A stretch of DNA of 63,541 nucleotides, the filler included, from Octopus bimaculoides (taxonomy: Eukaryota): NCBI RefSeq assembly GCF_001194135.2. It is 8 parts of 7 records of this genome, joined end to end, with 100 filler letters (N's around TTAATTAATTAA, not from the genome) between each part and the next. Parts side by side here need not be neighbours in the genome. Positions count along the whole stretch, not along the records: positions 47,186 to 60,629 come from NC_068983.1; 7 more parts are not named here. One strand, 5' to 3'. The translations under genes and the position numbers were made by a program. The stretch's first letter is position 1. Each line of letters starts with the position of its first letter. This document shows positions 46,723-60,629 of this stretch, one piece after another. The notes under the pieces were generated by a model. That model ran no database searches. It was given only the letters and a program-made list of their open reading frames with translations, and was not told the origin of the DNA.

Positions 46723-47208
46723 ATAATGTGTGCGTGTATACATATATATGGCTTGTGTATGTATAGTACACGCATAATCACACATACACACACACACATA
46801 TATAGAGGGAAAACAAACAAAATCCTTTAAAAATAGCTTGATAGTTTTAAAGGCTTTATTTCTCCTTGTTACAGGATTGTCGTAAAACGGGGTTACACAT
46901 AAGGTTAGGTGAAAAGCAACAACAACAACAAAAACAACAAGTTAGGAACGAAACATAATGTGTTTGTGCTCTTTTATTAATTCCTATGGTTTATGGAGTT
47001 AAAAGCAGTGGTTAGTGCTGTCACACATAAACACACACACACATATACACACATAGATGTACATATATATATATATATATATATANNNNNNNNNNNNNNN
47101 NNNNNNNNNNNNNNNNNNNNNNNNNNNNNTTAATTAATTAANNNNNNNNNNNNNNNNNNNNNNNNNNNNNNNNNNNNNNNNNNNNATATATATATATATA
47201 TATATATA

Positions 47209-47505
47209 CCGCCTGACTGGCCTTGTAGGGTTTTCGAGCGAGATCGTTGCCAGTGCTCCTGGACTGGCTCTTGTGCGGGTGGCACATAAAAGACACCATT
47301 TTGAGCGTGGCTGTTTTCGTGCGGGTGACACGTAAAAGCACCCACTACACTCTCTGAGTGGTTGGCGTTAGGAAGGGCATCCAGCTGTAGAAACTCTGCC
47401 AAATTAGTTTGGAGCCTGGTGTTGCCATCCGGTTTCACCAGTCTTCAGTCAAATCGTCCAACCCATGCTAGCATGGAAGGCGGACGTTAAACGATGATGA
47501 TGATG
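47209..47505 (+). mobile_element. SINE / non-autonomous retroposon with RTE-type 3' tail
   Basis: Ends ...GTTGGCGTTAGGAAGGGCATCCAGC...CCCATGCTAGCATGGAAGGCGGACGTTAAACGATGATGATG. A degenerate copy of the same tail lies at about 9660-9745. Confidence 0.75.
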
Positions 47506-48575
47506 TGCAAAGTTAAGGTGAATGAATGGTTAATATTCTCAGAAAGTTTAACACATTCCTGAGTAGGAGCCTCAGAAATATGCTAAAAATTAGATATCCA
47601 GAAATTTTGGCCAACAAAGACCTCTCAAAGCCAAGCAGAAACCCATCAGCTAAAAATAAAGAGACATGTGATTATGGATAGGCCATATGCTAAAAGAGTT
47701 GTTTGGTTTGGCAAGCTTAGAGTGAAACCCAGAAAAGGAAAGGAAGCAGGATATCCAAAGATCAGCAGAAGAGGAACTGAAGACGAAAAGCATAAGACAA
47801 CACATTAAGAAGACTACTGTGAGAACCTACATTCTGCCTGAAATCCAAACAGGCCTTAATAATAATAATAATAATAATAATGTACATTATTTTTTTTGTT
47901 GAAGAAATGTCATTAATTTTCAATATTCTTTGTACTATGCTGCCCAACACTGTCTCTGATAGTCACCCACACTCCTTTCACTACTGGGCCATACCACCCA
48001 TGTAATAAGAGATAACACTGAACCCAGTCAAGCCAAACTGATCAAAACATTGTGTAAGTATAAATATGTATTGTGAAAATAAAGTTTTTCATCTGGGAAA
48101 TTATTACTCAATAGTCAAAAAACTCTTCATACTAATAGTCAACATATTCTCCCTCATCCTCTCCAACTCCTTCAACCCAATGTCTCTGAGTCTTGTCATA
48201 TAACTGTTCTCTTCAGTGATGATAGGAAAAACTAGGGTGTACACATCCCACTTTCTTCTGTCGTCACTATCTGCAATTCAGTCTCCTGCTCACACTGCAC
48301 TGAATGAACAGACACAATATAGCTTAGAGTAAGGCCTAGTATTAGAGGGTAGAAGGCAACCTCAACAGTGCTGGTGCCATGATAAAATGCACCCAGTACC
48401 CTATAAACTGGATAGTAAACAGAGATAGCATAGGATCGAGAGGACCCGTTCGTCTTGTTGATTTCATAAACTCTGTAGTGCTGATACCATGATAAAACAT
48501 ACAATCCACTCTGCAAGGTGGTTGGTATAGGAAGAGTATTCAGCTAAGGAAATCAAGGTAAAATTAATCACATAC

Positions 48576-48597
48576 AATTCATAGTCCTCCAATTCAT
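48576..48597 (-). CDS. Candidate 22-nt microexon of an unidentified minus-strand gene
   Basis: Minus strand reads gtttgttcttatttggatttgttgcccttttag|ATGAATTGGAGGACTATGAATT|gtatgtg. Open frames are (D)ELEDYE(L/F) or MNWRTMN. Phase-compatible with 55564-55589. Confidence 0.4.
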
Positions 48598-48999
48598 CTA
48601 AAAGGGCAACAAATCCAAATAAGAACAAACACTGGGATGAACAAAAATGGATGTCAAGCAAATTTAATCTATGCTATTTAGTTCCATCTTGGATACACAT
48701 TTGGACTGTGTGGAGCTAGCTGTTAGAAGATGGGGTGTGCAAAAGCCTTGCAAACCTGCTCAAACACTTTCAGTTGTCTGAGAAGTACTGACTGGGTTTT
48801 CCAAATGTACCAGTGTAGACATGGACAAACTACAAGTCATATCTAGATATAATATTTTGCAGACCAAATAGATAAGGATGGTATAAGTTGTCCACTTTTT
48901 AAAATTGACAGCTACACAGACCACAAATTTGTGATCTACACAGTCAACTTAGACTTCAAAGGAGGGATCTGGGTACTGGAGGCTGAACACATCATTCCT

Positions 49000-51430
49000 G
49001 ATGTGCCAAACTTACAGAGACCAAATTAATTAAGTTGGCATTGGCGGCTCAGTTGTCAACAACAAATGGTGTGTTAGAAAGGAATAAAATAGAGGGAAAC
49101 TTAGAAGTGGTACTTAGGAAAGGCATTGCAACTGATGTGCTGGTGGTGATTCTTCAATGCTGGACCAATTCTTCAATGCTAAGTATGAAGGATGCATTGT
49201 CAGAGCTAAGGTGCATGCTTAAGAAACAAGAGAGCGAAAGCCGCTTGATGGGCCACAATAGCAGAGGTCCGTGACAACAAAACCACAATTCAGTCTTTGG
49301 TGGGCCAAAATGGTTGCATGGTACTTGAGCTTGAGTAGATGTGAGCGGCATTTTAACAGCATGGACTTCAACAGCTAGTTATGACATTCTTAGCAAGCGG
49401 GTATGAGACATTGTGACATGCCAATAACAGCCAAGGAAATATGAGAAGCAATGATGAGCTTAATGGTGGGTAAATCACCTAGTTTGGATGGTCTGCCCTA
49501 CGAACTTTACTTTTATATGCCAGACTTGTTTGTTGACCTCTTAGCAGACATCTACTATAATTAGCAACAGAATGGGAAAATTCTTAGTTCTGTGAGTTGA
49601 GTAGTGGCACTACTGAGAAAGGATCCAAACAAAGGGGATCAATTAGAAAGTTGATAATTAGAAAGCCCATAATGTTGCTGAATGCAGATTTAAAAATCTG
49701 GGCCAAGATGTTCACAAAGAGGTTGATGTTTGTTGTCAAAGTATTGATTGGTGATGCACAAACATGCACCATCCCAAGCATATCCATCCATGGCAACCTC
49801 CACCTCATGCAATGTATCAAAGACAGGGTGGGTAAAGGACCTGGCATGGGTAGGGCCTTGATAAGTTTGAATCAATCTAAAGCCTGTGATAGGGTCAACT
49901 ACTAATACTTGGCAGCTGGTTTTGGTCGCATTTTCTGTGGGTGGATCACCACAATGTACAGCAACATCTGCTTGGTAGTTTGAGTGAAATGTTACCATTC
50001 AGTATCATGCACTCAGTCCATCAAGGGTGTCTGCTCCCATCTCTTCTGCATATACAAGTTCTAGAGCAAACTACTGCAGAAATTGGAGGTGCTGAGAGGC
50101 ATCCTGTGCAAACTAGGGTGTGGGAGAACTGTGTCAACACAGGCAGATGACCTCACCATTATAGTGTTCAACACTAGGCTCTTAGGCCTAGTTGGCACTG
50201 CTTTAAAGGAATACATTGCAGTGACAGGAGAAAAGTCAGTGGACCTTCAGCTTAGCACCTGGAGAGACAGGTCCATGCTATCCAATAAGGTGGAATGCTG
50301 GACAGAGAGACTGGTTAAATTGCTCAGGGTCTGGTTTGATCTGAATTTCCAGCTGGAGGAGAACTTGGATGAGGTGATGAGCAAAATAGCCAATCTAACC
50401 TAGAAATGGGCTTAGAGAAAACTATCCCTGAAAGGTCAGGCAGAGGTGGCGAATGCATACATTGCCTCCATTATATATTACCACCTGACCATTGTGCCTT
50501 AGCCTAGTTTATGTCTGATCGAACTGGAATGCACACTCTTCCATTCTACTGGTCAGGCACTCCATGTGAATGGAGGGACTGACATGCTGCAGCTGCTGAT
50601 GCACTGAGGCTATGACATCTCCAGCGCTTCCTTGATGGTGAGCAGGTATGGTCACTGTTTGTCAGGATTTTCCATGCCTCATCTCTTTGACTGAGCTGCA
50701 ATCTTGGATCATGCAAAGACTGAAGCAAGGTACCTAGCATCTAGAGTGTTGTCAGGCACTCACAGTCCTCTATCAGTTGGGCAATGCAATTAGTAGAAGT
50801 TGCAATTTGGCATTCTGTAGAAGGTTAGTGGTAGGTAAGTATAATAACATTCTTGGAGAGGCTCTGGGTGCCAATGAGAATCAACTGGTTGGTCTGTACT
50901 GGAGGCCAGGGACTATGAATAATTTCTAGAAATTCTTAACCTGACAGTGCTACTGGAGGGTATTGCCACTTGGGATAGTCTTTACAGGCATGAAAGTGAC
51001 ATCAGCCAGGCTTACCTGAGATGCTTGCAGAGCAACAAAACTGTTCTGCATACTCTCATCCAAGCATTGCTGACTGGTGGATGTATGTTGAACACCTGCT
51101 GTTATGAGCAGGATGGATCCAGCTATTAGCTGAGTCCATTGTGAAGATAATCCTACAGCCTTCCTTTGGCCAGAATGGACAGACAATATTTCTTTGACTG
51201 GTGACCTTAAGCAAAAGAGGTTATGTGGTGGACCAGATTGAAAGGGCTAAAGACAAATATGTTCCTCTTTGGTCAAGCCCCCATCAACTTTTTCAAGTTT
51301 CACTTGAAAAGAAGAGTGAGAGTAGAGAGGGAAGTGTTGCCTCCCAGCACTTTGGTTGAAAGGTGGGTGAATGTTGTAAGAATGGCCAACTCTAAGCATG
51401 TGCCTGTTGGTTGAAGGAGGATGATGTGGA
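49000..51430 (+). mobile_element. Tx1/L1-like LINE ORF2 remnant, copy 1
   Basis: Fragments KSPSLDGLPYELY, RKPIMLLNADLKIWAKMFTKRL..IGDAQTCTIPSISIHGNLHLM, QGCLLPSLL and STQADDLTII are RT motifs of Tx1-type elements; frameshifted, with stops. Confidence 0.85.
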
Positions 51431-51969
51431 GACGGCACTTAGCCTAGTGGTCAGAGCAGCCATACTTTTGTGGGATCTCCATGAGCAGCCCTAGGAAGTC
51501 TCCATCTTTTGGGAAATTATTCATTGTTACAATTTTATATTGTTACTATATTTCAACTTTTTAGGTGCCTTTTATATAAGCCCACATTGTATTATCCTGT
51601 ACTGTCCCTAGTGTCTTGTTTTGTGAACCTTTAGTAGTTAATAAAGAAAACATTATTATTATGGCTACCATTTTGGAAAGACTTGAAGTTCCATAAGTTG
51701 TGTTTTTAATCCTTTTGACCTTCTAAGGCTCTATTCTTTCATTTTTATTGTCATCACCTTGTTTCTGACATTGTCTGGACTGCACTGATAGTAGTTTTGT
51801 TTAGAAACACGCCCTGTTTTGCAGGAGGTGCACATCAATATTTTTTAAACTTTCACCAACTATTGGAAAAAGCAAATACTTTGCTAGTTTCCATATATAT
51901 TGAATGGCTGATAAAAAAGTAATCATAATGTTCGATGATGAGATGCATTTCGTGTAGGAAAAAACAGAG

Positions 51970-52570
51970 AATACTGGCGTAGCATTGACTACAGTAAATG
52001 ACGTCACCGCCATGCCAGCAAAAACAAAAACCGAGTCTAATACATTTTCATCTCTAAGCAATGTCAAAACTGTAAAGCAGCAACTTTCTAACACATTTGA
52101 TGATGACAACAACAACAACAGAAACATCAACAATACCAATATTGAAGTGAAACCTAGAGAAAGAAATATAAACAAAGAAAATTCTGAAAGCAACACGAAC
52201 ATGACCACTGCCACCAATACTACCTCCACTGCAGCTGCTAAAGTAGCTACAGCCATGGTGACAAGGGATGCCGGAAAGGGGATTTCTTCTATGAATGTTA
52301 TAAGAAATCTGGAAGATTTCCCCATAGACAAAGAAGTGAAACTAGCCAGAAGATTTGCAAAAAAAAAAAAATGGAGGGATAGTAGTCCTCAACCCTCCAT
52401 CTGATGTGATCAAAAACATCTTGAGATGCATGGTTACATACCGCTGCATCAGAATAAAATCACATCGGATGGAAAATCCTTCCGAGAACCAAATCCAAAA
52501 ATGCCTTGGGTGCATGTGGGAACACAAGGCCCACATGTGTGGTAGTTTGGTTGGGGAAGTGATGGCTTGA
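51970..52570 (+). mobile_element. Probable ORF1 (gag-like) remnant of Tx1-like copy 2
   Basis: N/T-rich low-complexity ORF 51985-52404, followed by degenerate zinc-knuckle-like YRCIRIKSH and CLGCMWEHKAHMC, directly upstream of the RT remnant. Confidence 0.45.
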
Positions 52571-52599
52571 CGACCGTAGAAGACTTTATTTTGTACCTG

Positions 52600-54620
52600 G
52601 GTGACCTACACAGTTCTCAGCAGTGAACATAAAATTCTGCAAAAAGCCAATGATGACCATTGAAATACAGGAGACGATGAGTGATTTCATAAGTCGCAAA
52701 TCACCTGGCTTGGATGGTCTGCCCTATGAATTCTATGTAATCACGCCAGATTTGTTTGGCAGCCTCTTGACAGATGTCTACTGTAACTGGGAGCAGAACA
52801 GGAGAACTCCTAGTGCTATTTGCTGGGATGTAGTAACACAGTTGAGAAAGGATGCCAAGAATGGGGACATGCTAGAGAATTTTTGGCCCATAATTCTGTT
52901 AAACACAGAATTCAAGATTTTGGTTTATGTGTTAGCAAAAAGGTTGGTGCTTGTCATTGGAAGTCAGGTTGGGGATGTGCAAACATGCACAATCCCAAAC
53001 AGGTCTATCCATGACAACCTTCACTTTATGTGACATATTGTAGAGATAAAAGCTGGCTTTGGTGGGGTTCTGATCAATTTAGCATTTGAAAGGGTTAACC
53101 ATTGTTACTTGGAAGCTCTCCTAAAAGTGGCTGGTTTTGGAACCATTTTCAGAAGCAATGCAGAGCAGCCCCTGCTCAGTGGTCAAAGTAAACAGCCACC
53201 TATCGGAACCATTTTGCATTGCATGTTTGGTCCATCAGGACTTCCCACTGCCACCTTTTCTGTATGTGCTGGTTCTCAAGTCAATGCTGTGGCAGTTGAA
53301 ACAGTTGAGGGCATACCTTTTGAACTGGGACTCAAGAGGGCAGTGTCAGCGTATGCAGAAGATGTTACCATCATGATGTCAGATGCTTCCAAAGTAGAGA
53401 TGGTTGGCTTCATTGCAAAGGAGTGAGTCAGTTGCGGGGGTCAAAATCAATGCTGACAAGTTAGTGAGCTTGTGAAGGAGCACTTAGAGAGGCAGATCGA
53501 TGCCATAAGATGGTGTTGTCAGACACTGGACTGACAGACCAGTTAAACTACTTGAGGTTGGGTTTGGTCCCCACCTCCAGGTGGATAAGAACTGGGACGA
53601 ACAGGATGGCCAGTCTTACCCAGAAATGGGCAAAGGTGGTGAATGCCTACATTGCCTCCATCATCATTTATTGCCTGATCATTGTGCCTTGTCCCAGTTA
53701 TTGTTTGATTAGCTTGGAGCATCTCCTGTTTATTTTCTTGTGGAAGGAATACATTCCACTGGTCAGGCAGCCAATCTAACGTCAGCACCTGTTGCATGGT
53801 GGCTTAGGCATGCCATGGCTTCTGATGTGCAGACATGTGCTCAGGTTGCACCACCTGCAATGATTTCTTGACGCTGAGCATGTATGAGCTCTATTTGTGA
53901 GACACATCTTTCTGCAGCTCATCTCTTAGACAGGGCTGCAGTCTTGGGTGAAGGATTGACTGAGACTGGGTGCCTGGCACCTAGAATGTCATCAGGCACT
54001 CACTTTCCTCAACCAGTCAGGCAATAGGATCAGTGGATCTTCCACTTTAGATACATATAGAGGATTAGTGGCAGAGAAGTGCAACAACATCCTCGGGGAG
54101 ACCCTGGATGTTGATGAAAATGAACAGTCTAGTCTGTTCCAGTGAACTTTTCGGTCAGGGACTACTATAGATAATATTCAGATGTTTTTGGCCAGGCAGT
54201 GCTATCAGTTCAGGATAAACTTCATAGGCACAGATGTGCTGTCAGACAGGCTTAACCAAGGTGTGTGCAGAGTGACAAAACAATCCTGCATGCCTTCATT
54301 CAGTATCTGGGCATTGAAGGCTTGTGGAGTTATGTTGAACAGCTGTTGTCACATGCGGGACAGACCCTTCTGTCAGCTTATAGTGATGATTGCTCCGCTG
54401 CCCTCCGGCAGTTTTCCTTTTTTTTTTGGTGGTTGTGGCAGAAGAGATTTTCTGGTGGACAAGGCTGAAAGGAATGAGGACAGAGACATTCCTATATGGT
54501 AGAGCCCACATCAACTTTTTCAAGTTTCACTTGAAAAGGAAAGGGTAGAGAGGGAGATGTTGCCCTCGAATGAATTTATTAAAAGGTGGATGAAAGTTGT
54601 GAAAATAGCTAGAGTGGATG
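52600..54620 (+). mobile_element. Tx1/L1-like LINE ORF2 remnant, copy 2
   Basis: KSPGLDGLPYEFY..ENFWPIILLNTEFKILVYVLAKRL..QTCTIPNRSIHDNLHFM and VSAYAEDVTI; colinear with, but diverged from, copy 1. Confidence 0.85.
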
Positions 54621-55563
54621 GTACCACTCTAAGTGTAAACTTGTGTATACGTAGTTAAAAACTTTAAGACTTGTATAAGTTGGCTGTTGTGAATGCTTTT
54701 TCTGCAACCACTATCATCACTTACTACATTGTCAAAAGTCAACCAAAAATATAGATATAAACTCTCGTTTTATCTTTTTGGAGTTTATGTTCTATTTTTA
54801 CAGCATCAGTAGTGTCTTCTACAATGTTACCTGTGCAAGTATGGAAGAACAGAGGTAAAAATGAAGGCAATGATGATGATAATGAATCTGTTTGGAAGAA
54901 GGAGGAAAAGAAGCAGTAGAAAACAAGATATGATTATTTGGCCACACTTTACATAAAAAGAGTATTATTTTTAGATCAGGTCATCTCATATTCACATCAC
55001 TGGCCAAAGTCAGTGTTTATCTATTAGTTCTGCAATCGCCATTCTGATCTTCAAATTTTCAACCTGGAAAAGACAAACCAACATTGTATAAGGATTTCTT
55101 TTGACTATGGAAGCAAGATGTCAGCAAATTAAGCTTTTAGATAAATATATTTAAAGTTTTTATATAAGTAAAGAGGACAGTATCACAAATAACTGAGTAA
55201 ACAGAATGTGAACCTATAGATGAAGGTTTGTAACAGCTACTATGTTTCTCTAAAAGAAAAAGAGATACTTAACCTTCAATGGCCAAGTTGATCAAGCTGT
55301 TAACTGATACTATAAGGAGCCAAAGTTCACAGAGTGGAAGCATTGCTTAATATGTATAGAGGTAACTTGTTTCACTAACCACAAATTCTCTTATTGTCAA
55401 GCAACAATTACAGTACATTTTTGTTCAGTCACTATTTGAAACTGAAGTTTATAATGATGTCCCAACAACACAAATAGAATTAGAGCCACTCAATGAATGT
55501 TACCTCAAATTGATGGAAAGACAAAACAAAGTAATTTTGTTTATGTTAAAATGTTTTGCTTAC

Positions 55564-55589
55564 CTGACAACAGATTATCAAAAATACTT
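55564..55589 (-). CDS. Candidate 26-nt microexon of an unidentified minus-strand gene
   Basis: Minus strand reads ttttgttttgCTAACatcattggcttcag|AAGTATTTTTGATAATCTGTTGTCAG|gtaagc: branch point, acceptor and strong donor, in non-repeat sequence. Open frames are (R)SIFDNLLS or (x)VFLIICCQ. Confidence 0.4.
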
Positions 55590-55989
55590 CTGAAGCCAAT
55601 GATGTTAGCAAAACAAAATCCCACTTTATTCCTCAGTTACCTTTTTAACTTTACAAAATGTCTCCTTAGAAATTTATTTTCTTTAATTAGGGGTTATTAT
55701 TAAGGAATTCTACAAATAGATTTATCTACATTACAGCTCTCTTTTCTTGAAAATGGTTCTATTATTTAATTTTTTTTTAATATAGGGATATCGTAGATAC
55801 ATTATAGGCATGCATTTGACAGTTCAACATGACCTGACTAGCCAGAAAGCTGCATTGGGCTCCAACATCTGCTTTGGCAAGGTTACTAGTTGGATGTTCT
55901 TCTTAACACCTGACTAGTTAACAGGGTGTACTGAGTTAGGGGGTTTTTTTTTTGGCACCAGCACTAATGAGGTCACCAAGTAACTTGCT

Positions 55990-56420
55990 AAACAAAACTT
56001 CTTGACAAAATGGAGGTACAAGTTAAGGGATGTGGCTTTGTATCAGATATTGAGAGATTAAAGAATGATAGGGGAACAAGAATAGATATCTTGCTCTAAA
56101 GGAGGTGAGGGAGAAAAGATGGTGGAAATGAGATACCGTGGCATACCTTCAAAATACAAGAAGGAGAATAAATAGGGAACAGGAAAAGAGAATTGAGGAT
56201 AACTGGGTGGGCATATTTGCGAGAGTGTGAGTGGAATATGACAGATGGTAAAAATGAGGATAGAAATGAATGCAGTGAATAATGAACATGGGTAAGGAAA
56301 ACAGAGGTGGGTCAGAAAGGAGGAGGTAAAAGGTGGGCTGAAGACCAACAGTATAATAAAACCATAGATAGATGAGAAATAGGGAGAAGAGTGTGGTGAA
56401 GAGGGAAGAGGTACAGCAAT
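55990..56420 (+). mobile_element. Old RTE-like LINE 3' fragment
   Basis: Degenerate similarity to the RTE C-terminal LR W.GH...RIEM...G.GK.RW segment; many stops. Confidence 0.4.
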
Positions 56421-56689
56421 AGATACAGAGATTTTTGGCACACTGGCTGGATATAGTGAATTACAATAAAAGAGATAAGTGTTGATGACAGACATGAGAA
56501 AGTGTTCAGGGAAAGGGGGCATTCAACGTAAATATAGTGGCAAGGGAAGTAGTTCCAAGATGAGGGAGTGCTTGTGGCACTGAAGTTGGGTTGGAATATG
56601 TGCAGCTCTGCTTTCATACAGCTACAGCAGCTGAAGAAATAGAGCTAAAGTCGAGGGGTGAAAGATGGATAAATGTTAGAAAAATGTGT

Positions 56690-57052
56690 TGTGGAAGACA
56701 CATACAAATTGGATGTGAAGGAAAAGATATGATATGCTTTTCAGACATCCTCTTTTGCTGAGATGGATGGGTTTTCTCAAGTTCAGCAACTTGTGATTTC
56801 ACTTGATCCTTTGTCATCTCTTTCTATGAGGCCCAACAACATGAGGTCAGTGTTCACTAATTCATCTCATATTTTCTTGGGTCCTCTTCTTCCACAGATT
56901 CCATCTATATTTAGCTATTGGCACTTCCTTTGTCCTCATCCAAATGCATCACATGACCATATTAATGCAGTTCTCTCTCTTGCACACTACATCAGATGCT
57001 TCTTATGCTTAACTTTTCTCTCAAAACATTTGCACTTTGTCATACATGCACA
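56690..57052 (-). mobile_element. RTE-clade LINE, 3' part (left of the hAT insertion)
   Basis: Minus translation gives decayed VHV..VLREKL..RSI..VQER.L..YGH and RGRPKKIWDELVNTDL..LGL, the typical RTE ORF C-terminus. Confidence 0.75.
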
Positions 57053-57909
57053 CAGGGCTGGATTTATAGGGGTGAGGAGGGGCAATTGCCCCAGGCATCT
57101 AGATATTGGTGGGGAGCCCCTACTAGGAAAGGTATGTAGCATTCAATACAGGAACCCCCCCACTCCCAGCAATCTGGCATAATGAAGCTCTTTTTCAATA
57201 TACAAATGTATCTTGACTTCTTAAAAAATGTAATGGATTCTCTTTTGTGATAAAAACCTGTAATAATTCGACCGTGCGAACCAAAGGAGATGGCGACGTA
57301 GACGGAAAAGGCTCCTTTTTACCATGTCGCATGGTCGAACACAAAATAAGATAGAAGGCTCGTCATGAGAGATACAAGCCATAGTGCCAGTAAAAGAACT
57401 TAGGACAGACAACCGATATATATATATATATAGAGAGAGAGTAAGTTTATTAACATAGTGAAACTGTTTGTGTCTGTGTGTACGTGCATGCGACATATAT
57501 AATTAACACAGTGGATAAGTCAGGCCTTCGTGTACAAGAGAATGTATACAACAATGTGAAGTAACGGACAGTCGTATAAGCAATAGTGTGTGTACAATAC
57601 ATGAGAGTACAAGTGTGCGTGTGAATGAGAGGAAACACAGAACATAGAAAGAGTGTCTGTAACATAGACTGTAAAAAGTCTTAAAACACTGAGATAGAGA
57701 AATACCAGTTCGTATTAGAGTTACACAAGGAGATAGAATGTTCATACGCAGGAAGTTGTGGCTAAGTAGCAGAGCTGTGGTATCACAATATGTGTGTTGT
57801 GCGTCGAATGCTGTGACCGTTTACCTAATACGGAATATTCTCGCGTGGTGGAAACAATCCACTCAAACAGTGTCGATATAAAACCGAGTGTGTTGATATT
57901 GGTGTGTAC

Positions 57910-57938
57910 CTGGTGGTGGGGTTGCTGGCACACGACAT
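57910..57938 (-). CDS. Candidate first coding exon (MSCASNPTT-R) just downstream of a TATA box
   Basis: acaATG TCG TGT GCC AGC AAC CCC ACC ACC AG|gtacac; ends in phase 2; the donor is only moderate. Alternatively it is a 37-codon uORF whose TAG stop sits just before a gtaaac donor near 57826. Confidence 0.22.
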
Positions 57939-57949
57939 TGTGGTAGACA

Positions 57950-58120
57950 ATACGACTACTGTCATTGGATTGGGCTTATTTATAGTTGAAATAGGGCTCA
58001 CCGGAAACCCAGAAAAACTCTCTTTCACGTGACCTTATCTCAAGGCCATGATTGGATGTAATGCCCCCTTAGCAAGCAGAACATGGGGACAATTGCCGCG
58101 CAAATAAGAACCAATCAGGA
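57950..58120 (-). promoter_or_regulatory. Pol II promoter-like module: TATA box, CCAAT boxes, E-box, ETS-like site
   Basis: Minus-strand TATAAATA at 57984-57977; CCGGAA at 58001-58006; GTCACGTGA (USF/MiT-type E-box) at 58033-58025; CCAAT at about 58050 (minus) and 58110 (plus). Lies in a visibly CpG-rich patch (about 57240-58100) within CpG-poor flanks. Confidence 0.55.
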
Positions 58121-58366
58121 TGGTGGACAGAAGGGTCCAAGGCAGCCTAAGGCTAGATGTTAGCAGCTTCGTTATCATTTATGATTGAATGCCTGAGAGA
58201 GAGGTTTCACTACAAAGCCATAGATTTTTACCACTTTTTTTTTACCACCAAATAATTCAATCAAAAAACAGTTTATACCCAGTTCCAAAGCAGTTACAAT
58301 TCCCAGAGGAATTGTAGCTGCTGTTGGGGCAGAGAAAAGGGAAATAACAGAACACTCCTGAAACTC

Positions 58367-58407
<41 letters not shown>

Positions 58408-59981
58408 GTATAAATGTATATAATGATTCATAAAAAAATATTGTCTCTGGGCCAAATTAAGCCAAATTTTTTTTTCAACACATGACTGAGCTTGATCTTG
58501 GCTTCACCAATAGCAGTTAAAGGCATACACACACACACATTTCTACTTCCAAACTTATTTCAGTGGGGATTTGAAAACTGTTCTTATTTTATGAAGCAAG
58601 TAAATAAAGAAAACTTTTGAATTTAGTTTTAATTATAAAATTACATCTCTCAACAGCTAAAAGCATTCTTTTTCAGCTTTAGAATTATTGTATATATATT
58701 CAAATGTTTCATTAAATCGAACCTTTTTTCTTTTTCATTTTTTCATATATTTTATGTCATTCTGTCAAAGACTTGGAAGTGGGGCAAAAATGATAACTGT
58801 GTCAAAATGAATAATTTCTGATTTCTTGTTATTTTCTCTCATTTTGTACCATTACATCATCTTTGGATGTAAAATTTGGTCAGTATAGTTTACATAGTTG
58901 TTGTTGAAGTTGAGAGTTTGAAACATAGGTGACAGGTACTATTTTCAAGAAACTTTTTCTCAATTTTGACCCAGTTGTAATTGTGGTAGCTAATAAAATA
59001 TCTGGATAATTTTTGGTGAAGAAGCTATAAAGAATATTTTATGTTGAGTTTTTAGATTTAGCATGAGTTTCATTAATTTCATAGTATGTACTATTTTTCC
59101 ATAATCCTCTTTCATTTGACCAAGATATTTTAAATTTTGCTGTATTTCTGATATCTAAGAATGGATATATATGTGTATGACCCTTTTTCCAAATTTTATT
59201 TTGGAAAAATGGAAGGGCATATTTAGCTTGTCTTGTCTTACCCATATTTCCCTGCCTAAATTTTATTTTATAAGCTCAAAAAGAACAGTGATAATTTTCT
59301 GAAAGTGTTCTGAATACATTATAGGTTTTACTGTGTTTAGAGAAGATCTTTACTTCGCTGCTATAGTTTTGGCAAGGCAGTGTACATTTGTAAAAAAATA
59401 TATATACTTCAAAGTAAAAAATGTAGTAAATATTATTCATTGTGTCCCACTTACCCCTACTGGAAACTGGAAAAGCAGACTTTTGGAAACAGCTATTTGA
59501 ATTTCCCGTTTTTGTTTCTACCCCACCTCTCTCTCTCTCAAATACACACACACACATACACACACATCATGCCTTTGGAGCAGCAAGAACAAAAAAAAAA
59601 AGGATGTTTTGTTTGTAATTTTCTGTCATTTTATCTTATTCTACATTCTAAAACATTTGTAATTTGTAACTCACATTAAAAGAAAAAAAACTCTTACCCC
59701 ACTCTTCTCTCCTTCATTGTACTTTTCACAATGAAGGAAAAGTCAAACACCACAAGTGGTTGTGTGGAAAACAAAATTTGAATTTTGAGAAATGTATCTA
59801 TAAAGCGACATTTTCACTCATTTATTTAAACTTTCTCTGCTAACTCATCAAATTCAATTACATGAAATAGATGGGGCTTAAGATTTAAATTTGGTAATTT
59901 TCTAAGATTTTAATTCTTGTGTATAAAAGGCCCATCGAACTCAAAGTGCCCCAGGAACCCCATGGTTTAAATCCGGTCCTG

Positions 59982-60340
59982 CATGTACACTGACATTGCA
60001 CATCTGGGGGAACATGCTGACTTTATTTCTTTCTAATTTTCACATGTCCTCTACATTCACAGCCTACATTTCACAACCGTGTAGCACTGGTATTCATACA
60101 CAAGCATCAAACAATCTATCTTTTACTCTTACAGAGAAGGTTTTTTTTTTTCAGCACATCCTCCTCTGACTAACAGAAACTGTTGTGCTATCTCCAAAGT
60201 GCTTCCAGGACATTAAAGAAAATCTATTTCTTGTGCATCCTTTGTGTTTGTTGATACTGTAAAGCTTCCACAAATACTACACTACTTTTGCTGTTAATAT
60301 TTTGGAATTCCACTGCACTTCTTGCATATCCATTGTGTGG
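59982..60340 (-). mobile_element. RTE-clade LINE, upstream part (right of the hAT insertion)
   Basis: Minus translation gives decayed ..WICKKCSGI.. , RVKDRLFDACV..VLHGCEM.. and ..MCNVSVH, continuing into 56690-57052. Confidence 0.7.
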
Positions 60341-60629
60341 TGTTATGGGCTGTGATGAGCTATGTGTTGTGGTGGAGAGGGGTGAGGCAAACAGAGGTGA
60401 AGCCAGACCGGAAGGGCCAGACTGGAAGGGTCAGATCGGAAGTGTCAGACTGGAAGTCGGCGACACGCGGTCGAAGGCTAGCACGTGGGGCCAGTGAGAA
60501 AACAGCGACATTACGAGAAAGACGTGTTCTGATTAGGAGCGATCGTGTACCCCGCTGCGGTCGGCAAGGTAAGGTCCAACGCTTCATTCTGTCCTTTTAC
60601 TTCTTGTTGTCTTCTTCCTCCATCACACC
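60341..60629 (+). other. CpG-rich LTR-like or promoter/first-exon segment with 4 x 14-bp tandem repeat
   Basis: Begins TGTTATGG exactly where the RTE similarity stops. Repeats CCAGACCGGAAGGG/CCAGACTGGAAGGG/TCAGATCGGAAGTG/TCAGACTGGAAGTC at 60403-60458. CACGTG near 60482 and donor AAG|gtaagg at 60569. Truncated by a gap. Confidence 0.35.

What the first reader, a model, noticed from the sequence alone, without database searches (positions are those of the whole stretch)
57053..59981. A promoter-like module carried inside a hAT transposon that is itself inserted in a LINE
Seen: TIRs, an 8-bp TSD (7/8 match) and the rejoined RTE frame fix the element boundaries. Inside lies a canonically ordered minus-strand set (CCAAT about -95, GTCACGTGA about -75, CCGGAA about -50, TATAAATA about -30, good-context ATG and a donor). 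That part of the element is CpG-rich, while the element's right two-thirds and the flanks are CpG-poor. Established: in molluscs, germline gene-body methylation erodes CpG while active promoters escape it. Inference: this TE-borne promoter has stayed unmethylated and may have been exapted as a (possibly alternative) start site for a host gene downstream on the minus strand. Its insertion postdates the RTE, so it is evolutionarily young.
Basis: partly seen in the sequence, partly recalled or inferred. Interest (0 to 1): 0.8.

Follow-up and report, generated by a model that had tools for sequence, protein, structure and literature searches.

The report
Promoter-like block inside a hAT transposon
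A 2.9-kb defective hAT-type DNA transposon sitting in a decayed LINE carries a roughly 1-kb CpG-undepleted segment with a textbook RNA polymerase II promoter layout; it looks more like a separately acquired, LTR-like mobile-element unit than a proven host-gene start site, so it is an ordinary nested-repeat structure until expression data say otherwise.

Summary
TIRs CAGGGCTGGATTTA/CAGGACCGGATTTA match 12/14. The 8-bp TSD CATGCACA/CATGTACA matches 7/8. A LINE C-terminal frame continues across the excised element. A unique minus-strand CCAAT / GTCACGTGA / CCGGAA / TATAAATA / ATG / donor series is present. CpG o/e is 0.84 in the block (57269-58171), against 0 and 0.14 in the two arms.

The same TIR with an 8-bp TSD-like flank bounds a 336-bp MITE in an unrelated metagenome contig, which supports a real hAT-type terminus.

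The functional inference (unmethylated, exapted for a host gene, young) could not be tested, because no cephalopod genome, RNA or methylation data were reachable. The sequence offers an equally good or better alternative:
- The block shares nothing with the hAT ends.
- It has one TGT...ACA-bounded solution (57259-58214, flanks AAACC/AAGCC).
- It carries its own AATAAA about 500 nt downstream of the predicted start, a U3-R-U5-like layout.
- CpG retention is weakest at the promoter itself (0.47) and strongest downstream (1.05).
- A SINE-like insert in the same CpG-poor locus is equally CpG-rich (0.80).
- No coding exon is detectable in the 10 kb downstream on the minus strand.

Best reading: a foreign, LTR-like Pol II unit nested in, or taken up as filler by, a non-autonomous hAT. 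Interest is low to moderate.

The parts
57045..57052 (.). Left copy of the 8-bp target-site duplication (CATGCACA)
   Evidence: matches 59982-59989 (CATGTACA) at 7/8; the TIR plus TSD combination is rare in shuffles (mean 0.1 per piece).
57053..57066 (+). Left terminal inverted repeat CAGGGCTGGATTTA (YARNG-type start CAGGG)
   Evidence: 12/14 match to the reverse complement of 59968-59981; the same 20-mer terminus bounds a 336-bp MITE with 8-bp TSD-like flanks in metagenome contig L001.
57053..57258 (.). Left arm of the non-autonomous hAT-type element; no CpG
   Evidence: 0 CpG against 9.3 expected, with TpG/CpA near expectation (1.11/1.03).
57259..58214 (-). CpG-undepleted block, 956 bp. Candidate nested LTR-like unit or filler segment with ends TGTAATAA...TCACTACA and flanks AAACC/AAGCC.
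   Evidence: CpGs span 57269-58170, o/e 0.84; this is the only TGT...ACA solution with a TSD-like flank (4/5), but 13% of shuffles do as well; no similarity to the hAT ends above the null; no other copy in the piece.
57416..57441 (.). Compound microsatellite (AT)8.5(AG)5 inside the block, just downstream (minus strand) of the AATAAA
57446..57451 (-). The only AATAAA on the minus strand of the block, followed by the microsatellite and a GU/U-rich stretch (CGGTTGTCTGTCC...GTTCTTTT)
   Evidence: About 500 nt downstream of the predicted start. A single hexamer in AT-rich DNA is not significant on its own.
57910..57960 (-). Predicted first exon. Start is about 57954-57960 (CAGT Inr-like at 57961-57958). 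ATG at 57938-57936, then 9 codons MSCASNPTT plus 2 nt, then donor CCAG|GTACAC (intron from 57909).
   Evidence: The donor is moderate (GTAC, no G at +5). The unspliced ORF is only 37 codons. No protein homologue was found.
57977..57984 (-). TATA box TATAAATA
58001..58006 (.). ETS-type core CCGGAA
58025..58033 (.). Palindromic E-box GTCACGTGA (USF/TFE-type)
58051..58055 (-). CCAAT box. A second, NF-Y-consensus CCAATCAG lies on the + strand at 58111-58118.
58215..59981 (.). Right arm of the hAT-type element: AT-rich (GC 0.31), CpG-poor, with microsatellites
   Evidence: 6 CpG against 43.8 expected (figures computed for 58172-59981); compound (TG)n(GA)n at 58367-58408 and its inverted counterpart at 59515-59566.
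59968..59981 (-). Right terminal inverted repeat (reverse complement CAGGACCGGATTTA)
59982..59989 (.). Right copy of the target-site duplication (CATGTACA)
56790..57052 (-). 3' part of the interrupted, decayed LINE ORF2 C-terminus (...RERTALIW..., ...GRRGPKKI*DE...)
   Evidence: the frame is continuous with 59990-60350. CpG o/e 0.00, TpG/CpA o/e 1.6/1.9. Clade not determined.
59990..60350 (-). 5' part of the same interrupted LINE fragment (...GCEC...SQHVPPDVQCQ|)
   Evidence: CpG o/e 0.06.

Best explanation
The 2929-bp unit 57053-59981 is a non-autonomous hAT-type DNA transposon that cut-and-pasted into an old LINE fragment, making an 8-bp duplication.

Its CpG-undepleted block of about 0.95 kb (57259-58214, minus orientation) is not hAT sequence. 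It is a separately derived segment with the anatomy of a self-contained Pol II unit:
- a U3-like part of about 260 bp with NF-Y (CCAAT), E-box, ETS and TATA sites;
- a start near 57955-57960;
- an AATAAA at 57451-57446 followed by a GU/U-rich stretch;
- an additional tail of about 170 bp.

It is most likely a solo LTR, or another retroelement terminal unit, that inserted into the hAT later. Less likely, it is filler DNA picked up by the hAT.

On this reading the promoter module is the mobile element's own. The CpG contrast reflects a different origin and a younger age than the CpG-poor arms and LINE, not demonstrated protection from methylation. If the unit is transcribed, the default product is a short (about 0.5 kb) non-coding polyadenylated RNA that ends inside the block, not a host mRNA.

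Shown: the boundaries of the hAT, the motif cluster, the CpG contrast, and the lack of similarity between block and arms. Inferred: the LTR identity, the relative age, and the transcript.
For: hAT part:
- TIR 12/14 with a YARNG start and an 8-bp TSD at 7/8.
- The defining features of hAT are given in PMC3014272.
- The same terminus with 8-bp TSD-like flanks bounds a MITE in L001.

Block as foreign sequence:
- CpG changes sharply at both edges: 0 CpG in the 216 bp to the left and 0 in the 195 bp to the right, where 9.3 and 6.4 are expected.
- Alignment of the block to both hAT ends scores at the null median.

LTR-like layout:
- There is one TGT...ACA solution, 57259-58214, with terminal TGTAATAA/TGTAGTGA (6/8) and flanks AAACC/AAGCC.
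- The TATA box lies 230 nt from the 5' end, and there is a single AATAAA about 500 nt after the start.

Promoter module non-random: it is unique among 59 TATA-like sites, and 0 of 2000 simulations reproduce it.

Age or origin explains CpG as well as protection does:
- A SINE-like insert at 47208-47505 in the same CpG-poor locus has o/e 0.80.
- The promoter itself is the least CpG-rich part of the block, 0.47 against 1.05 downstream.

Precedent: non-autonomous hAT (Ds) elements commonly carry unrelated filler DNA and nested LTR elements (PMC3260210).

Coding: no coding capacity or homologue for any block ORF, no Rfam family and no tRNA.
Against: - The LTR-like boundaries are not statistically secure. 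13% of shuffled flanks give an equally good TGT...ACA plus TSD solution. Other direct repeats, such as the 8-mer AATAATTC at 57262/58251, compete.
- No second copy of the block could be found or looked for in any cephalopod genome, so repetitiveness is unproven.
- An R region of about 525 nt would be long for an LTR.
- One AATAAA in AT-rich DNA is expected by chance at roughly 0.3-0.5 per 500 nt (my estimate).
- The short ATG-bearing first exon with a donor is more gene-like than LTR-like.
- LTR elements are a minor repeat class in octopus genomes.
Confidence: 0.4

Rival explanations
1. The promoter module is an active, methylation-protected start site carried by the hAT. It has been exapted as a possibly alternative promoter of a host gene lying downstream on the minus strand. 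Transcripts start near 57955 and splice from the donor at 57910.
For: - The motif order and spacing are canonical and non-random.
- The ATG has A at -3 and is followed by a usable GT donor.
- The block is CpG-undepleted within a locus of o/e about 0.15.
- In octopus, methylation is concentrated in gene bodies and is absent from promoters of one class of methylated genes (MP2, PMC9476566). An unmethylated island inside a methylated body would therefore be meaningful.
Against: - No expression, chromatin or methylation data were reachable.
- CpG o/e is lowest at the promoter (0.47) and highest in the supposed intron (1.05).
- An AATAAA lies on the same strand 500 nt downstream.
- The ten longest minus-strand ORFs in the 10 kb downstream match no Pfam family. 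That DNA is mostly LINE copies in the opposite orientation.
- The donor is only moderate.
- A stronger candidate host promoter faces the other way at 60400-60568.
- An equally CpG-rich SINE-like insert shows that CpG richness here need not mean a promoter.
Confidence: 0.12
2. The block is host genomic DNA captured as filler by the hAT during gap repair (transduplication). It would comprise a promoter, a short first exon and part of intron 1 of some gene. It is CpG-normal because it was copied from an unmethylated promoter region relatively recently. It may be inert at its present site.
For: - The gene-like 5' end has TATA, CCAAT, E-box and ETS sites, a 5'UTR of about 20 nt, an ATG in good context, a 9-codon exon and a GT donor.
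- There is no similarity to the hAT ends.
- Ds-type hAT elements carry filler DNA that occasionally comes from genes, with introns (PMC3260210).
- No convincing TSD flanks the block.
Against: - Gene capture is described as rare for hAT elements.
- No protein with this N-terminus or ORF was found, though 9 codons are too few to search with.
- The donor gene could not be looked for.
Confidence: 0.2
3. The block belongs to the hAT family itself, for example as the 5' regulatory region of the autonomous element's transposase gene retained in an internal-deletion derivative. All family members would then carry it.
For: - Non-autonomous hATs often arise by internal deletion (Ds-del class).
- A GGGG(A)CAATTGCC motif at 58086-58099 resembles GGGGCAATTGCCCC at 57079-57092 near the left TIR.
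Against: - That resemblance is at chance level (score 21 against a null median of 20).
- The promoter lies about 2 kb from the upstream (right) TIR.
- No transposase-coding remnant exists anywhere in the element.
- The arms and the block differ sharply in CpG although they would be the same age.
- The MITE with the same TIR in L001 has no such block.
Confidence: 0.13
4. The motif series is a chance cluster in a CpG-normal stretch of unknown origin and has no promoter activity at all.
For: - The motifs are short.
- The motif set and the window were chosen after seeing the sequence.
- The start site is assumed, not observed.
Against: - 0 of 2000 simulated pieces and 0 of 2000 simulated blocks contain a TATA site with all three upstream motifs.
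- None of the other 58 TATA-like sites in the piece has even two of the three.
Confidence: 0.08

Closest known systems
Non-autonomous hAT elements with unrelated internal DNA (maize Ds2 / Ds-like-4 type; animal hAT-N families)
   Same: - 8-bp TSD.
- Short TIR starting YARNG (CAGGG, as in Ac C/TAGGGATGAAA).
- No transposase.
- Termini enclosing unrelated 'filler' or nested repeats.
- Inserted in repetitive DNA.
   Different: - The autonomous partner and the family consensus are unknown.
- The only other instance of the terminus that I could find is a 336-bp MITE in an unidentified metagenome contig.
- Whether the block is filler or a later nested insertion is unresolved.
Solo LTR of an LTR retrotransposon (Ty3/gypsy-like, BEL or similar)
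   Same: - About 1 kb and non-coding.
- TGT...ACA ends with a short imperfect terminal inverted repeat.
- A possible 5-bp TSD.
- U3-like promoter with CCAAT and TATA 230 nt from the 5' end.
- AATAAA downstream, then a U5-like tail.
- Younger-looking than the surrounding DNA.
   Different: - The TSD is only 4/5 and the boundary solution has p of about 0.13.
- No second copy or internal gag-pol partner could be examined.
- The inferred R region (about 525 nt) is long.
- It contains an ATG plus donor, which is not typical of LTRs.
TE-derived alternative promoters of host genes (for example LTR-driven transcripts in mammals)
   Same: A Pol II promoter sits inside a transposable element, in an orientation from which it could drive flanking DNA.
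   Different: - No transcript, chromatin mark or spliced host exon is shown here.
- The nearest plausible host promoter (60400-60568) points away.
Unmethylated promoter islands within methylated gene bodies in invertebrates (octopus MP2-type genes, PMC9476566)
   Same: A local patch of normal CpG content lies in a strongly CpG-depleted neighbourhood.
   Different: - CpG retention is centred downstream of the promoter, not on it (0.47 against 1.05).
- The same signature is shown by a SINE-like insert in the piece.
- The methylation state itself is unknown.

Membership tests
hAT superfamily (non-autonomous member) | 8-bp target-site duplication | tested here: met
   CATGCACA / CATGTACA, 7/8, directly abutting the TIRs. 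Rare in shuffles together with the TIR. Definition from PMC3014272.
hAT superfamily (non-autonomous member) | Short terminal inverted repeats beginning YARNG | tested here: met
   CAGGGCTGGATTTA and CAGGACCGGATTTA, 12/14. Both start CAGGG/CAGGA.
hAT superfamily (non-autonomous member) | hAT transposase (BED/RNase-H-like/hAT dimerisation domain) in the element or in a related autonomous copy | tested here: not met
   - No ORF over 112 aa in the element.
- The block ORFs have no homologue.
- This is expected for a non-autonomous element.
- An autonomous relative could not be searched for, because no host genome was available.
hAT superfamily (non-autonomous member) | Other copies sharing the termini (a family) | tested here: inconclusive
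   - There is one unrelated contig (L001 1180-1515) with CAGGGCAGGATTTA...TAAATCCAGCCCTG and flanks GACACGGA/GCCATGGA at 6/8.
- No copies from the source genome could be examined.
Solo LTR | 5'-TG...CA-3' ends with a short terminal inverted repeat | tested here: met
   57259 TGTAATAA ... TCACTACA 58214. The terminal octamers match 6/8 as an inverted repeat.
Solo LTR | 4-6-bp target-site duplication | tested here: inconclusive
   AAACC / AAGCC, 4/5. 12.6% of shuffled flanks give an equal or better solution.
Solo LTR | U3-R-U5 signal order (promoter, start, poly(A) signal) | tested here: met
   CCAAT, E-box, ETS and TATA at 58118-57977. Predicted start about 57955. AATAAA at 57451-57446 followed by a GU/U-rich stretch. 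These are consensus matches only.
Solo LTR | Homology to LTRs flanking a gag-pol element elsewhere in the genome | not testable with these tools
   No cephalopod genome is in any searchable collection.
Pol II core/proximal promoter in use | Sequence elements in canonical order (CCAAT, TATA at -30, Inr-like start) | tested here: met
   The site is unique in the piece, and 0 of 2000 simulations reproduce it.
Pol II core/proximal promoter in use | Transcript 5' ends, open chromatin, hypomethylation | not testable with these tools
   No CAGE, RNA-seq, ATAC or bisulfite data are accessible.
RTE-clade LINE (the host of the insertion) | RT/APE phylogenetic placement in RTE | not tested
- Only ORF2 C-terminal-type motifs are recognisable, which is my own reading.
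- The two + strand LINE copies at 49.0-51.4 and 52.4-54.6 kb are a different family.

The most novel reading that the evidence does not exclude
The most novel reading not excluded has three parts. First, a DNA transposon delivered a complete NF-Y/USF/ETS/TATA promoter with a mini first exon into a germline-methylated octopus locus. Second, transcription-factor occupancy has kept about 0.9 kb free of methylation, preserving its CpGs. Third, the host now uses it as a new or alternative start site. That would be a dated, sequence-resolved case of promoter birth by transposition in a cephalopod.
Probability: 0.1. Interest if true: 0.55.

Novelty: new member of a known kind. Interest (0 to 1): 0.22.

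Why it matters
If the block turned out to be an active start site protected from methylation, it would give a concrete, testable example of how transposons seed promoters in cephalopod genomes. TE load and TE expression are high in these genomes, and methylation is confined to gene bodies.

As the evidence stands, it is a nested-repeat structure: a LINE, a hAT inserted in it, and an LTR-like or filler segment inside the hAT. Its main practical lesson is methodological. In a CpG-depleted locus, a CpG-normal patch marks sequence of a different age or origin as readily as it marks a protected promoter. The SINE-like insert in the same piece shows this directly.

Tried and rejected
1. Using ORFs of the block as proxies to fish other copies out of the 5.8-billion-protein collection: no hit at all.
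2. The same approach with the rejoined LINE frame: no hit.
3. A LINE RT query, to locate the source genome or annotated neighbours: only three short metagenomic or Logan contigs at 46-55% identity, so no cephalopod genome is present.
4. Exact-protein look-ups of two window ORFs: not on record.
5. DNA pattern scans:
   - The block 23-mer gave nothing in metagenomes.
   - A degenerate TIR pattern gave nothing in prokaryote genomes.
   - A SINE-like 21-mer gave nothing in viral or prokaryote collections.
   - Only the TIR 20-mer hit one contig.
6. Full-text search for four diagnostic k-mers in papers: nothing.
7. Rfam and ARAGORN over the region: no snRNA, tRNA, hammerhead (which would suggest a Penelope-like element) or histone 3' element.
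8. Other nested-TE signatures:
   - A TG...CA plus exact TSD scan gave only a low-complexity AAAAA and a 4-mer.
   - My first candidate, 57207-58209 (TACAAA), is out of register and was dropped.
   - The 8-mer AATAATTC at 57262/58251 has no TIR or tail at the implied ends.
   - Helitron ends (5'-TC, CTRR-3' before T) were not found by eye.
   - No poly(A) tail lies at either edge.
9. Similarity of the block to the hAT ends, to the SINE-like element or to anything else in the piece: at null level.
10. Pfam on 20 ORFs of both strands: no domain.
11. The bacterial-type promoter/terminator scan is irrelevant to a eukaryote.
Full report
Scope. I worked only on the piece 47186-60629. No cephalopod genome, transcriptome or methylome is reachable with the tools. 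The conclusions therefore rest on the sequence itself, on one informative metagenome contig and on the literature.

**1. The transposon boundaries are real**

- The left end (57053) reads CAGGGCTGGATTTA. The reverse complement of the right end (59981) reads CAGGACCGGATTTA, a 12/14 match. A weaker GGGG...GGGGCA subterminal similarity follows.
- The octamers directly outside are CATGCACA and CATGTACA, a 7/8 match.
- I scanned the whole piece for any 14-nt TIR at 12/14 or better with an 8-bp TSD at 7/8 or better, at a spacing of 200-5000 bp. The scan returned this pair and one other. Twenty composition-preserving shuffles averaged 0.1.
- An 8-bp TSD and a YARNG terminal motif are the structural hallmarks of hAT (PMC3014272).
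- Independent support came from a scan of JGI metagenome contigs with the terminal 20-mer. It hit one contig, L001. There the 20-mer is the right end of a 336-bp MITE. Its left end is CAGGGCAGGATTTA and its flanks are GACACGGA/GCCATGGA, matching 6/8. So this terminus is a genuine transposon end that makes 8-bp duplications.
- The element has no transposase remnant. It is non-autonomous.

**2. The host of the insertion**

- I removed the element and one TSD copy. One minus-strand frame then runs through the junction without a shift...GCECRGHVKIRKK*SQHVPPDVQCQ|CACMTKCKCFERKVKHKKHLM*CARERTALIWSCDAFG*...GICGRRGPKKI*DELVNTDL....
- From my own knowledge, this order (YGCE.W-like, ...R.L.W.GH-like, G.R.RGRPKK.W-like) is that of a LINE ORF2 C-terminus. 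The many C and Q residues where R is expected fit CpG decay of Arg codons.
- The frame has 11 stops in 199 codons. The flanks have CpG o/e of 0-0.06 with a strong TpG/CpA excess. The fragment is old.
- I could not confirm the RTE clade.
- The flanks are unrelated to the two + strand APE-type LINE copies at about 49.0-51.4 and 52.4-54.6 kb.
- 'Postdates the LINE, so young' therefore does not follow.

**3. The promoter-like module is present and non-random**

- On the minus strand, upstream to downstream (+ strand coordinates), the series is:
  - CCAATCAG at 58111-58118, written on the + strand;
  - CCAAT at 58055-58051;
  - GTCACGTGA at 58033-58025;
  - CCGGAA core at 58001-58006;
  - TATAAATA at 57984-57977;
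  - a CAGT Inr-like site at 57961-57958;
  - ATG at 57938-57936, with A at -3;
  - nine codons (MSCASNPTT);
  - CCAG|GTACAC, with the exon ending at 57910.
- Among 59 TATA-like sites in the piece, this is the only one with CCAAT, CACGTG and CCGGAA all within 130 nt upstream. No other site has even two of the three. None of 2000 Markov-simulated pieces or blocks produced such a site.
- The motif definition was chosen after seeing the site. Even so, chance is an unlikely explanation.

**4. The CpG contrast is real, but its shape matters**

- CpGs in the element run from 57269 to 58170.
- CpG counts and o/e:

| Region | CpG observed | CpG expected | o/e |
|---|---|---|---|
| Block 57269-58171 | 33 | 39.5 | 0.84 |
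| Left arm | 0 | 9.3 | 0 |
| First 195 bp of right arm | 0 | 6.4 | 0 |
| Whole right arm | 6 | 43.8 | 0.14 |
| Rest of the piece | | | 0.15 |

- Within the block, the promoter part (57912-58171) has only 0.47. The 640 bp downstream of the donor have 1.05, and the last 154 bp have 1.27. A methylation-protected promoter would be expected to keep its CpGs best around the start site.
- Two other CpG-normal patches exist in the piece.
  - One is at 47208-47505 (o/e 0.80). This element is about 300 bp and ends in (GAT)n. From memory I recognise it as an abundant octopus SINE; I could not verify this.
  - The other is at the right edge, 60390-60629 (o/e 0.96).
- The first patch shows that, in this locus, a later insertion is CpG-normal simply because it is of different origin or age.
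- Published octopus methylomes show that fewer than 10% of CpGs are methylated, clustered in the bodies of a subset of genes. TEs on average are CpG-dense and little methylated (PMC9476566). The depletion seen here may therefore be a property of this locus or of these particular TE families. Either way, the block's CpG content does not by itself indicate protection.

**5. What the block is**

- It has no similarity to either hAT end above the null (scores 18-21 against null medians of 20-21).
- It has no similarity to the SINE-like element, nor to anything else in the piece.
- It has no Rfam family and no tRNA.
- Its ORFs have no homologue.
- On the minus strand it has a single AATAAA (57451-57446). 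This is followed by (CT)n(AT)n and a GU/U-rich stretch, about 500 nt after the predicted start, and then about 170 nt more.
- I searched the CpG-defined edges for TGT...ACA ends with a 4-6-bp flanking repeat. There is exactly one solution: 57259-58214 (956 bp), TGTAATAA...TCACTACA, with flanks AAACC/AAGCC. However, 12.6% of shuffled flanks do as well.
- The layout is promoter 230 nt from the 5' end, then start, then poly(A) signal, then tail. That is U3-R-U5-like.
- Non-autonomous hAT (Ds) elements are known to contain unrelated filler DNA and nested LTR retrotransposons. Only rarely do they contain captured gene fragments (PMC3260210).
- I therefore favour a foreign-origin, LTR-like unit nested in the hAT (0.40). 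Filler captured from a host promoter is next (0.20), since the short ATG exon with a donor is gene-like. Family-intrinsic sequence (0.13) and a chance cluster (0.08) follow.

**6. Exaptation**

- Nothing testable supports it.
- The ten longest minus-strand ORFs between 47186 and 57000 match no Pfam family. That DNA is largely LINE copies in the opposite orientation.
- The same-strand AATAAA would terminate unspliced transcripts inside the block.
- The donor is moderate.
- The best candidate host promoter in the piece lies 2.5 kb away and points the other way. It has 3.8 tandem 14-mers carrying (C/T)(C/T)GGAAG, a CACGTG at 60482, no ATG, and a strong donor GGCAAG|GTAAGG at 60568/60569.
Activity of the module as a TE promoter, without host use, is more likely than that.

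**7. Novelty**

All of the following are known phenomena: a hAT-type MITE-like element nested in a LINE, carrying a further foreign segment; TE-borne promoters; TE-derived host promoters. Even the most favourable reading would be a new cephalopod example of a known kind. The decisive tests are copy census and empty sites in octopus genomes, CAGE or long-read RNA, and germline bisulfite sequencing. They are straightforward and are listed separately.

Noticed in passing
window 60390-60629 (cut by the piece edge): This is a CpG-normal island (o/e 0.96). It has 3.8 tandem copies of CAGACCGGAAGGGT (ETS-like GGAAG cores) and a CACGTG at 60482. It has no ATG. A strong + strand splice donor GGCAAG|GTAAGG lies at 60568/60569. 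It looks like the promoter and non-coding first exon of a + strand host gene running off the piece, 2.5 kb from the block and divergent from it.
   Followed up: partly
window 47186-47505 (cut by the piece edge): An (AT)11 run is followed by a CpG-rich element of about 300 bp (o/e 0.80) ending in (GAT)4. From memory it resembles an abundant octopus SINE. It serves as an internal example that later insertions in this CpG-poor locus are CpG-normal. The identity was not verifiable with the tools.
   Followed up: partly
L001 1180-1515 (JGI metagenome contig Ga0209365_1043251): This is a 336-bp MITE with the same terminus as the window's element (CAGGGCAGGATTTA ... TAAATCCAGCCCTG). It has 8-bp TSD-like flanks (GACACGGA/GCCATGGA) and shares subterminal CCTGGGG/CCCCAGG motifs. 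The source organism is unknown.
   Followed up: partly
window 48900-51450 and 51800-54650, + strand: Two decayed copies of related APE-type LINEs lie in tandem orientation (66-79% nucleotide identity over their 3' halves). An RT is recognisable (KSPGLDGLPYEFY..., AYAEDV). The second copy has a somewhat CpG-richer 5' region at 51786-52785 (o/e 0.44) and an N/T-rich ORF at 51958-52401. They are a different family from the minus-strand LINE that hosts the hAT.
   Followed up: partly
window 48572-52736: This is the second TIR plus 8-bp TSD candidate from the scan (ATACAATTCATAGT; TTAATCAC/GTAATCAC). Its right end falls inside an uninterrupted LINE ORF (52605-53030), so it is probably a chance match.
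   Followed up: no
window 58367-58408 and 59515-59566: A compound microsatellite (TG)10(GA)11 and a reverse-complement-like (TC)n...(AC)n lie 1.1 kb apart in the right arm of the hAT (48 nt, 79% complementary). This could mark yet another nested unit, or it could be coincidence.
   Followed up: no
window 55800-56790: This is a strongly strand-asymmetric, purine-rich tract on the + strand (64% A+G; GC skew up to +0.59) immediately left of the LINE fragment. It gives long low-complexity ORFs on the minus strand with no Pfam match.
   Followed up: no
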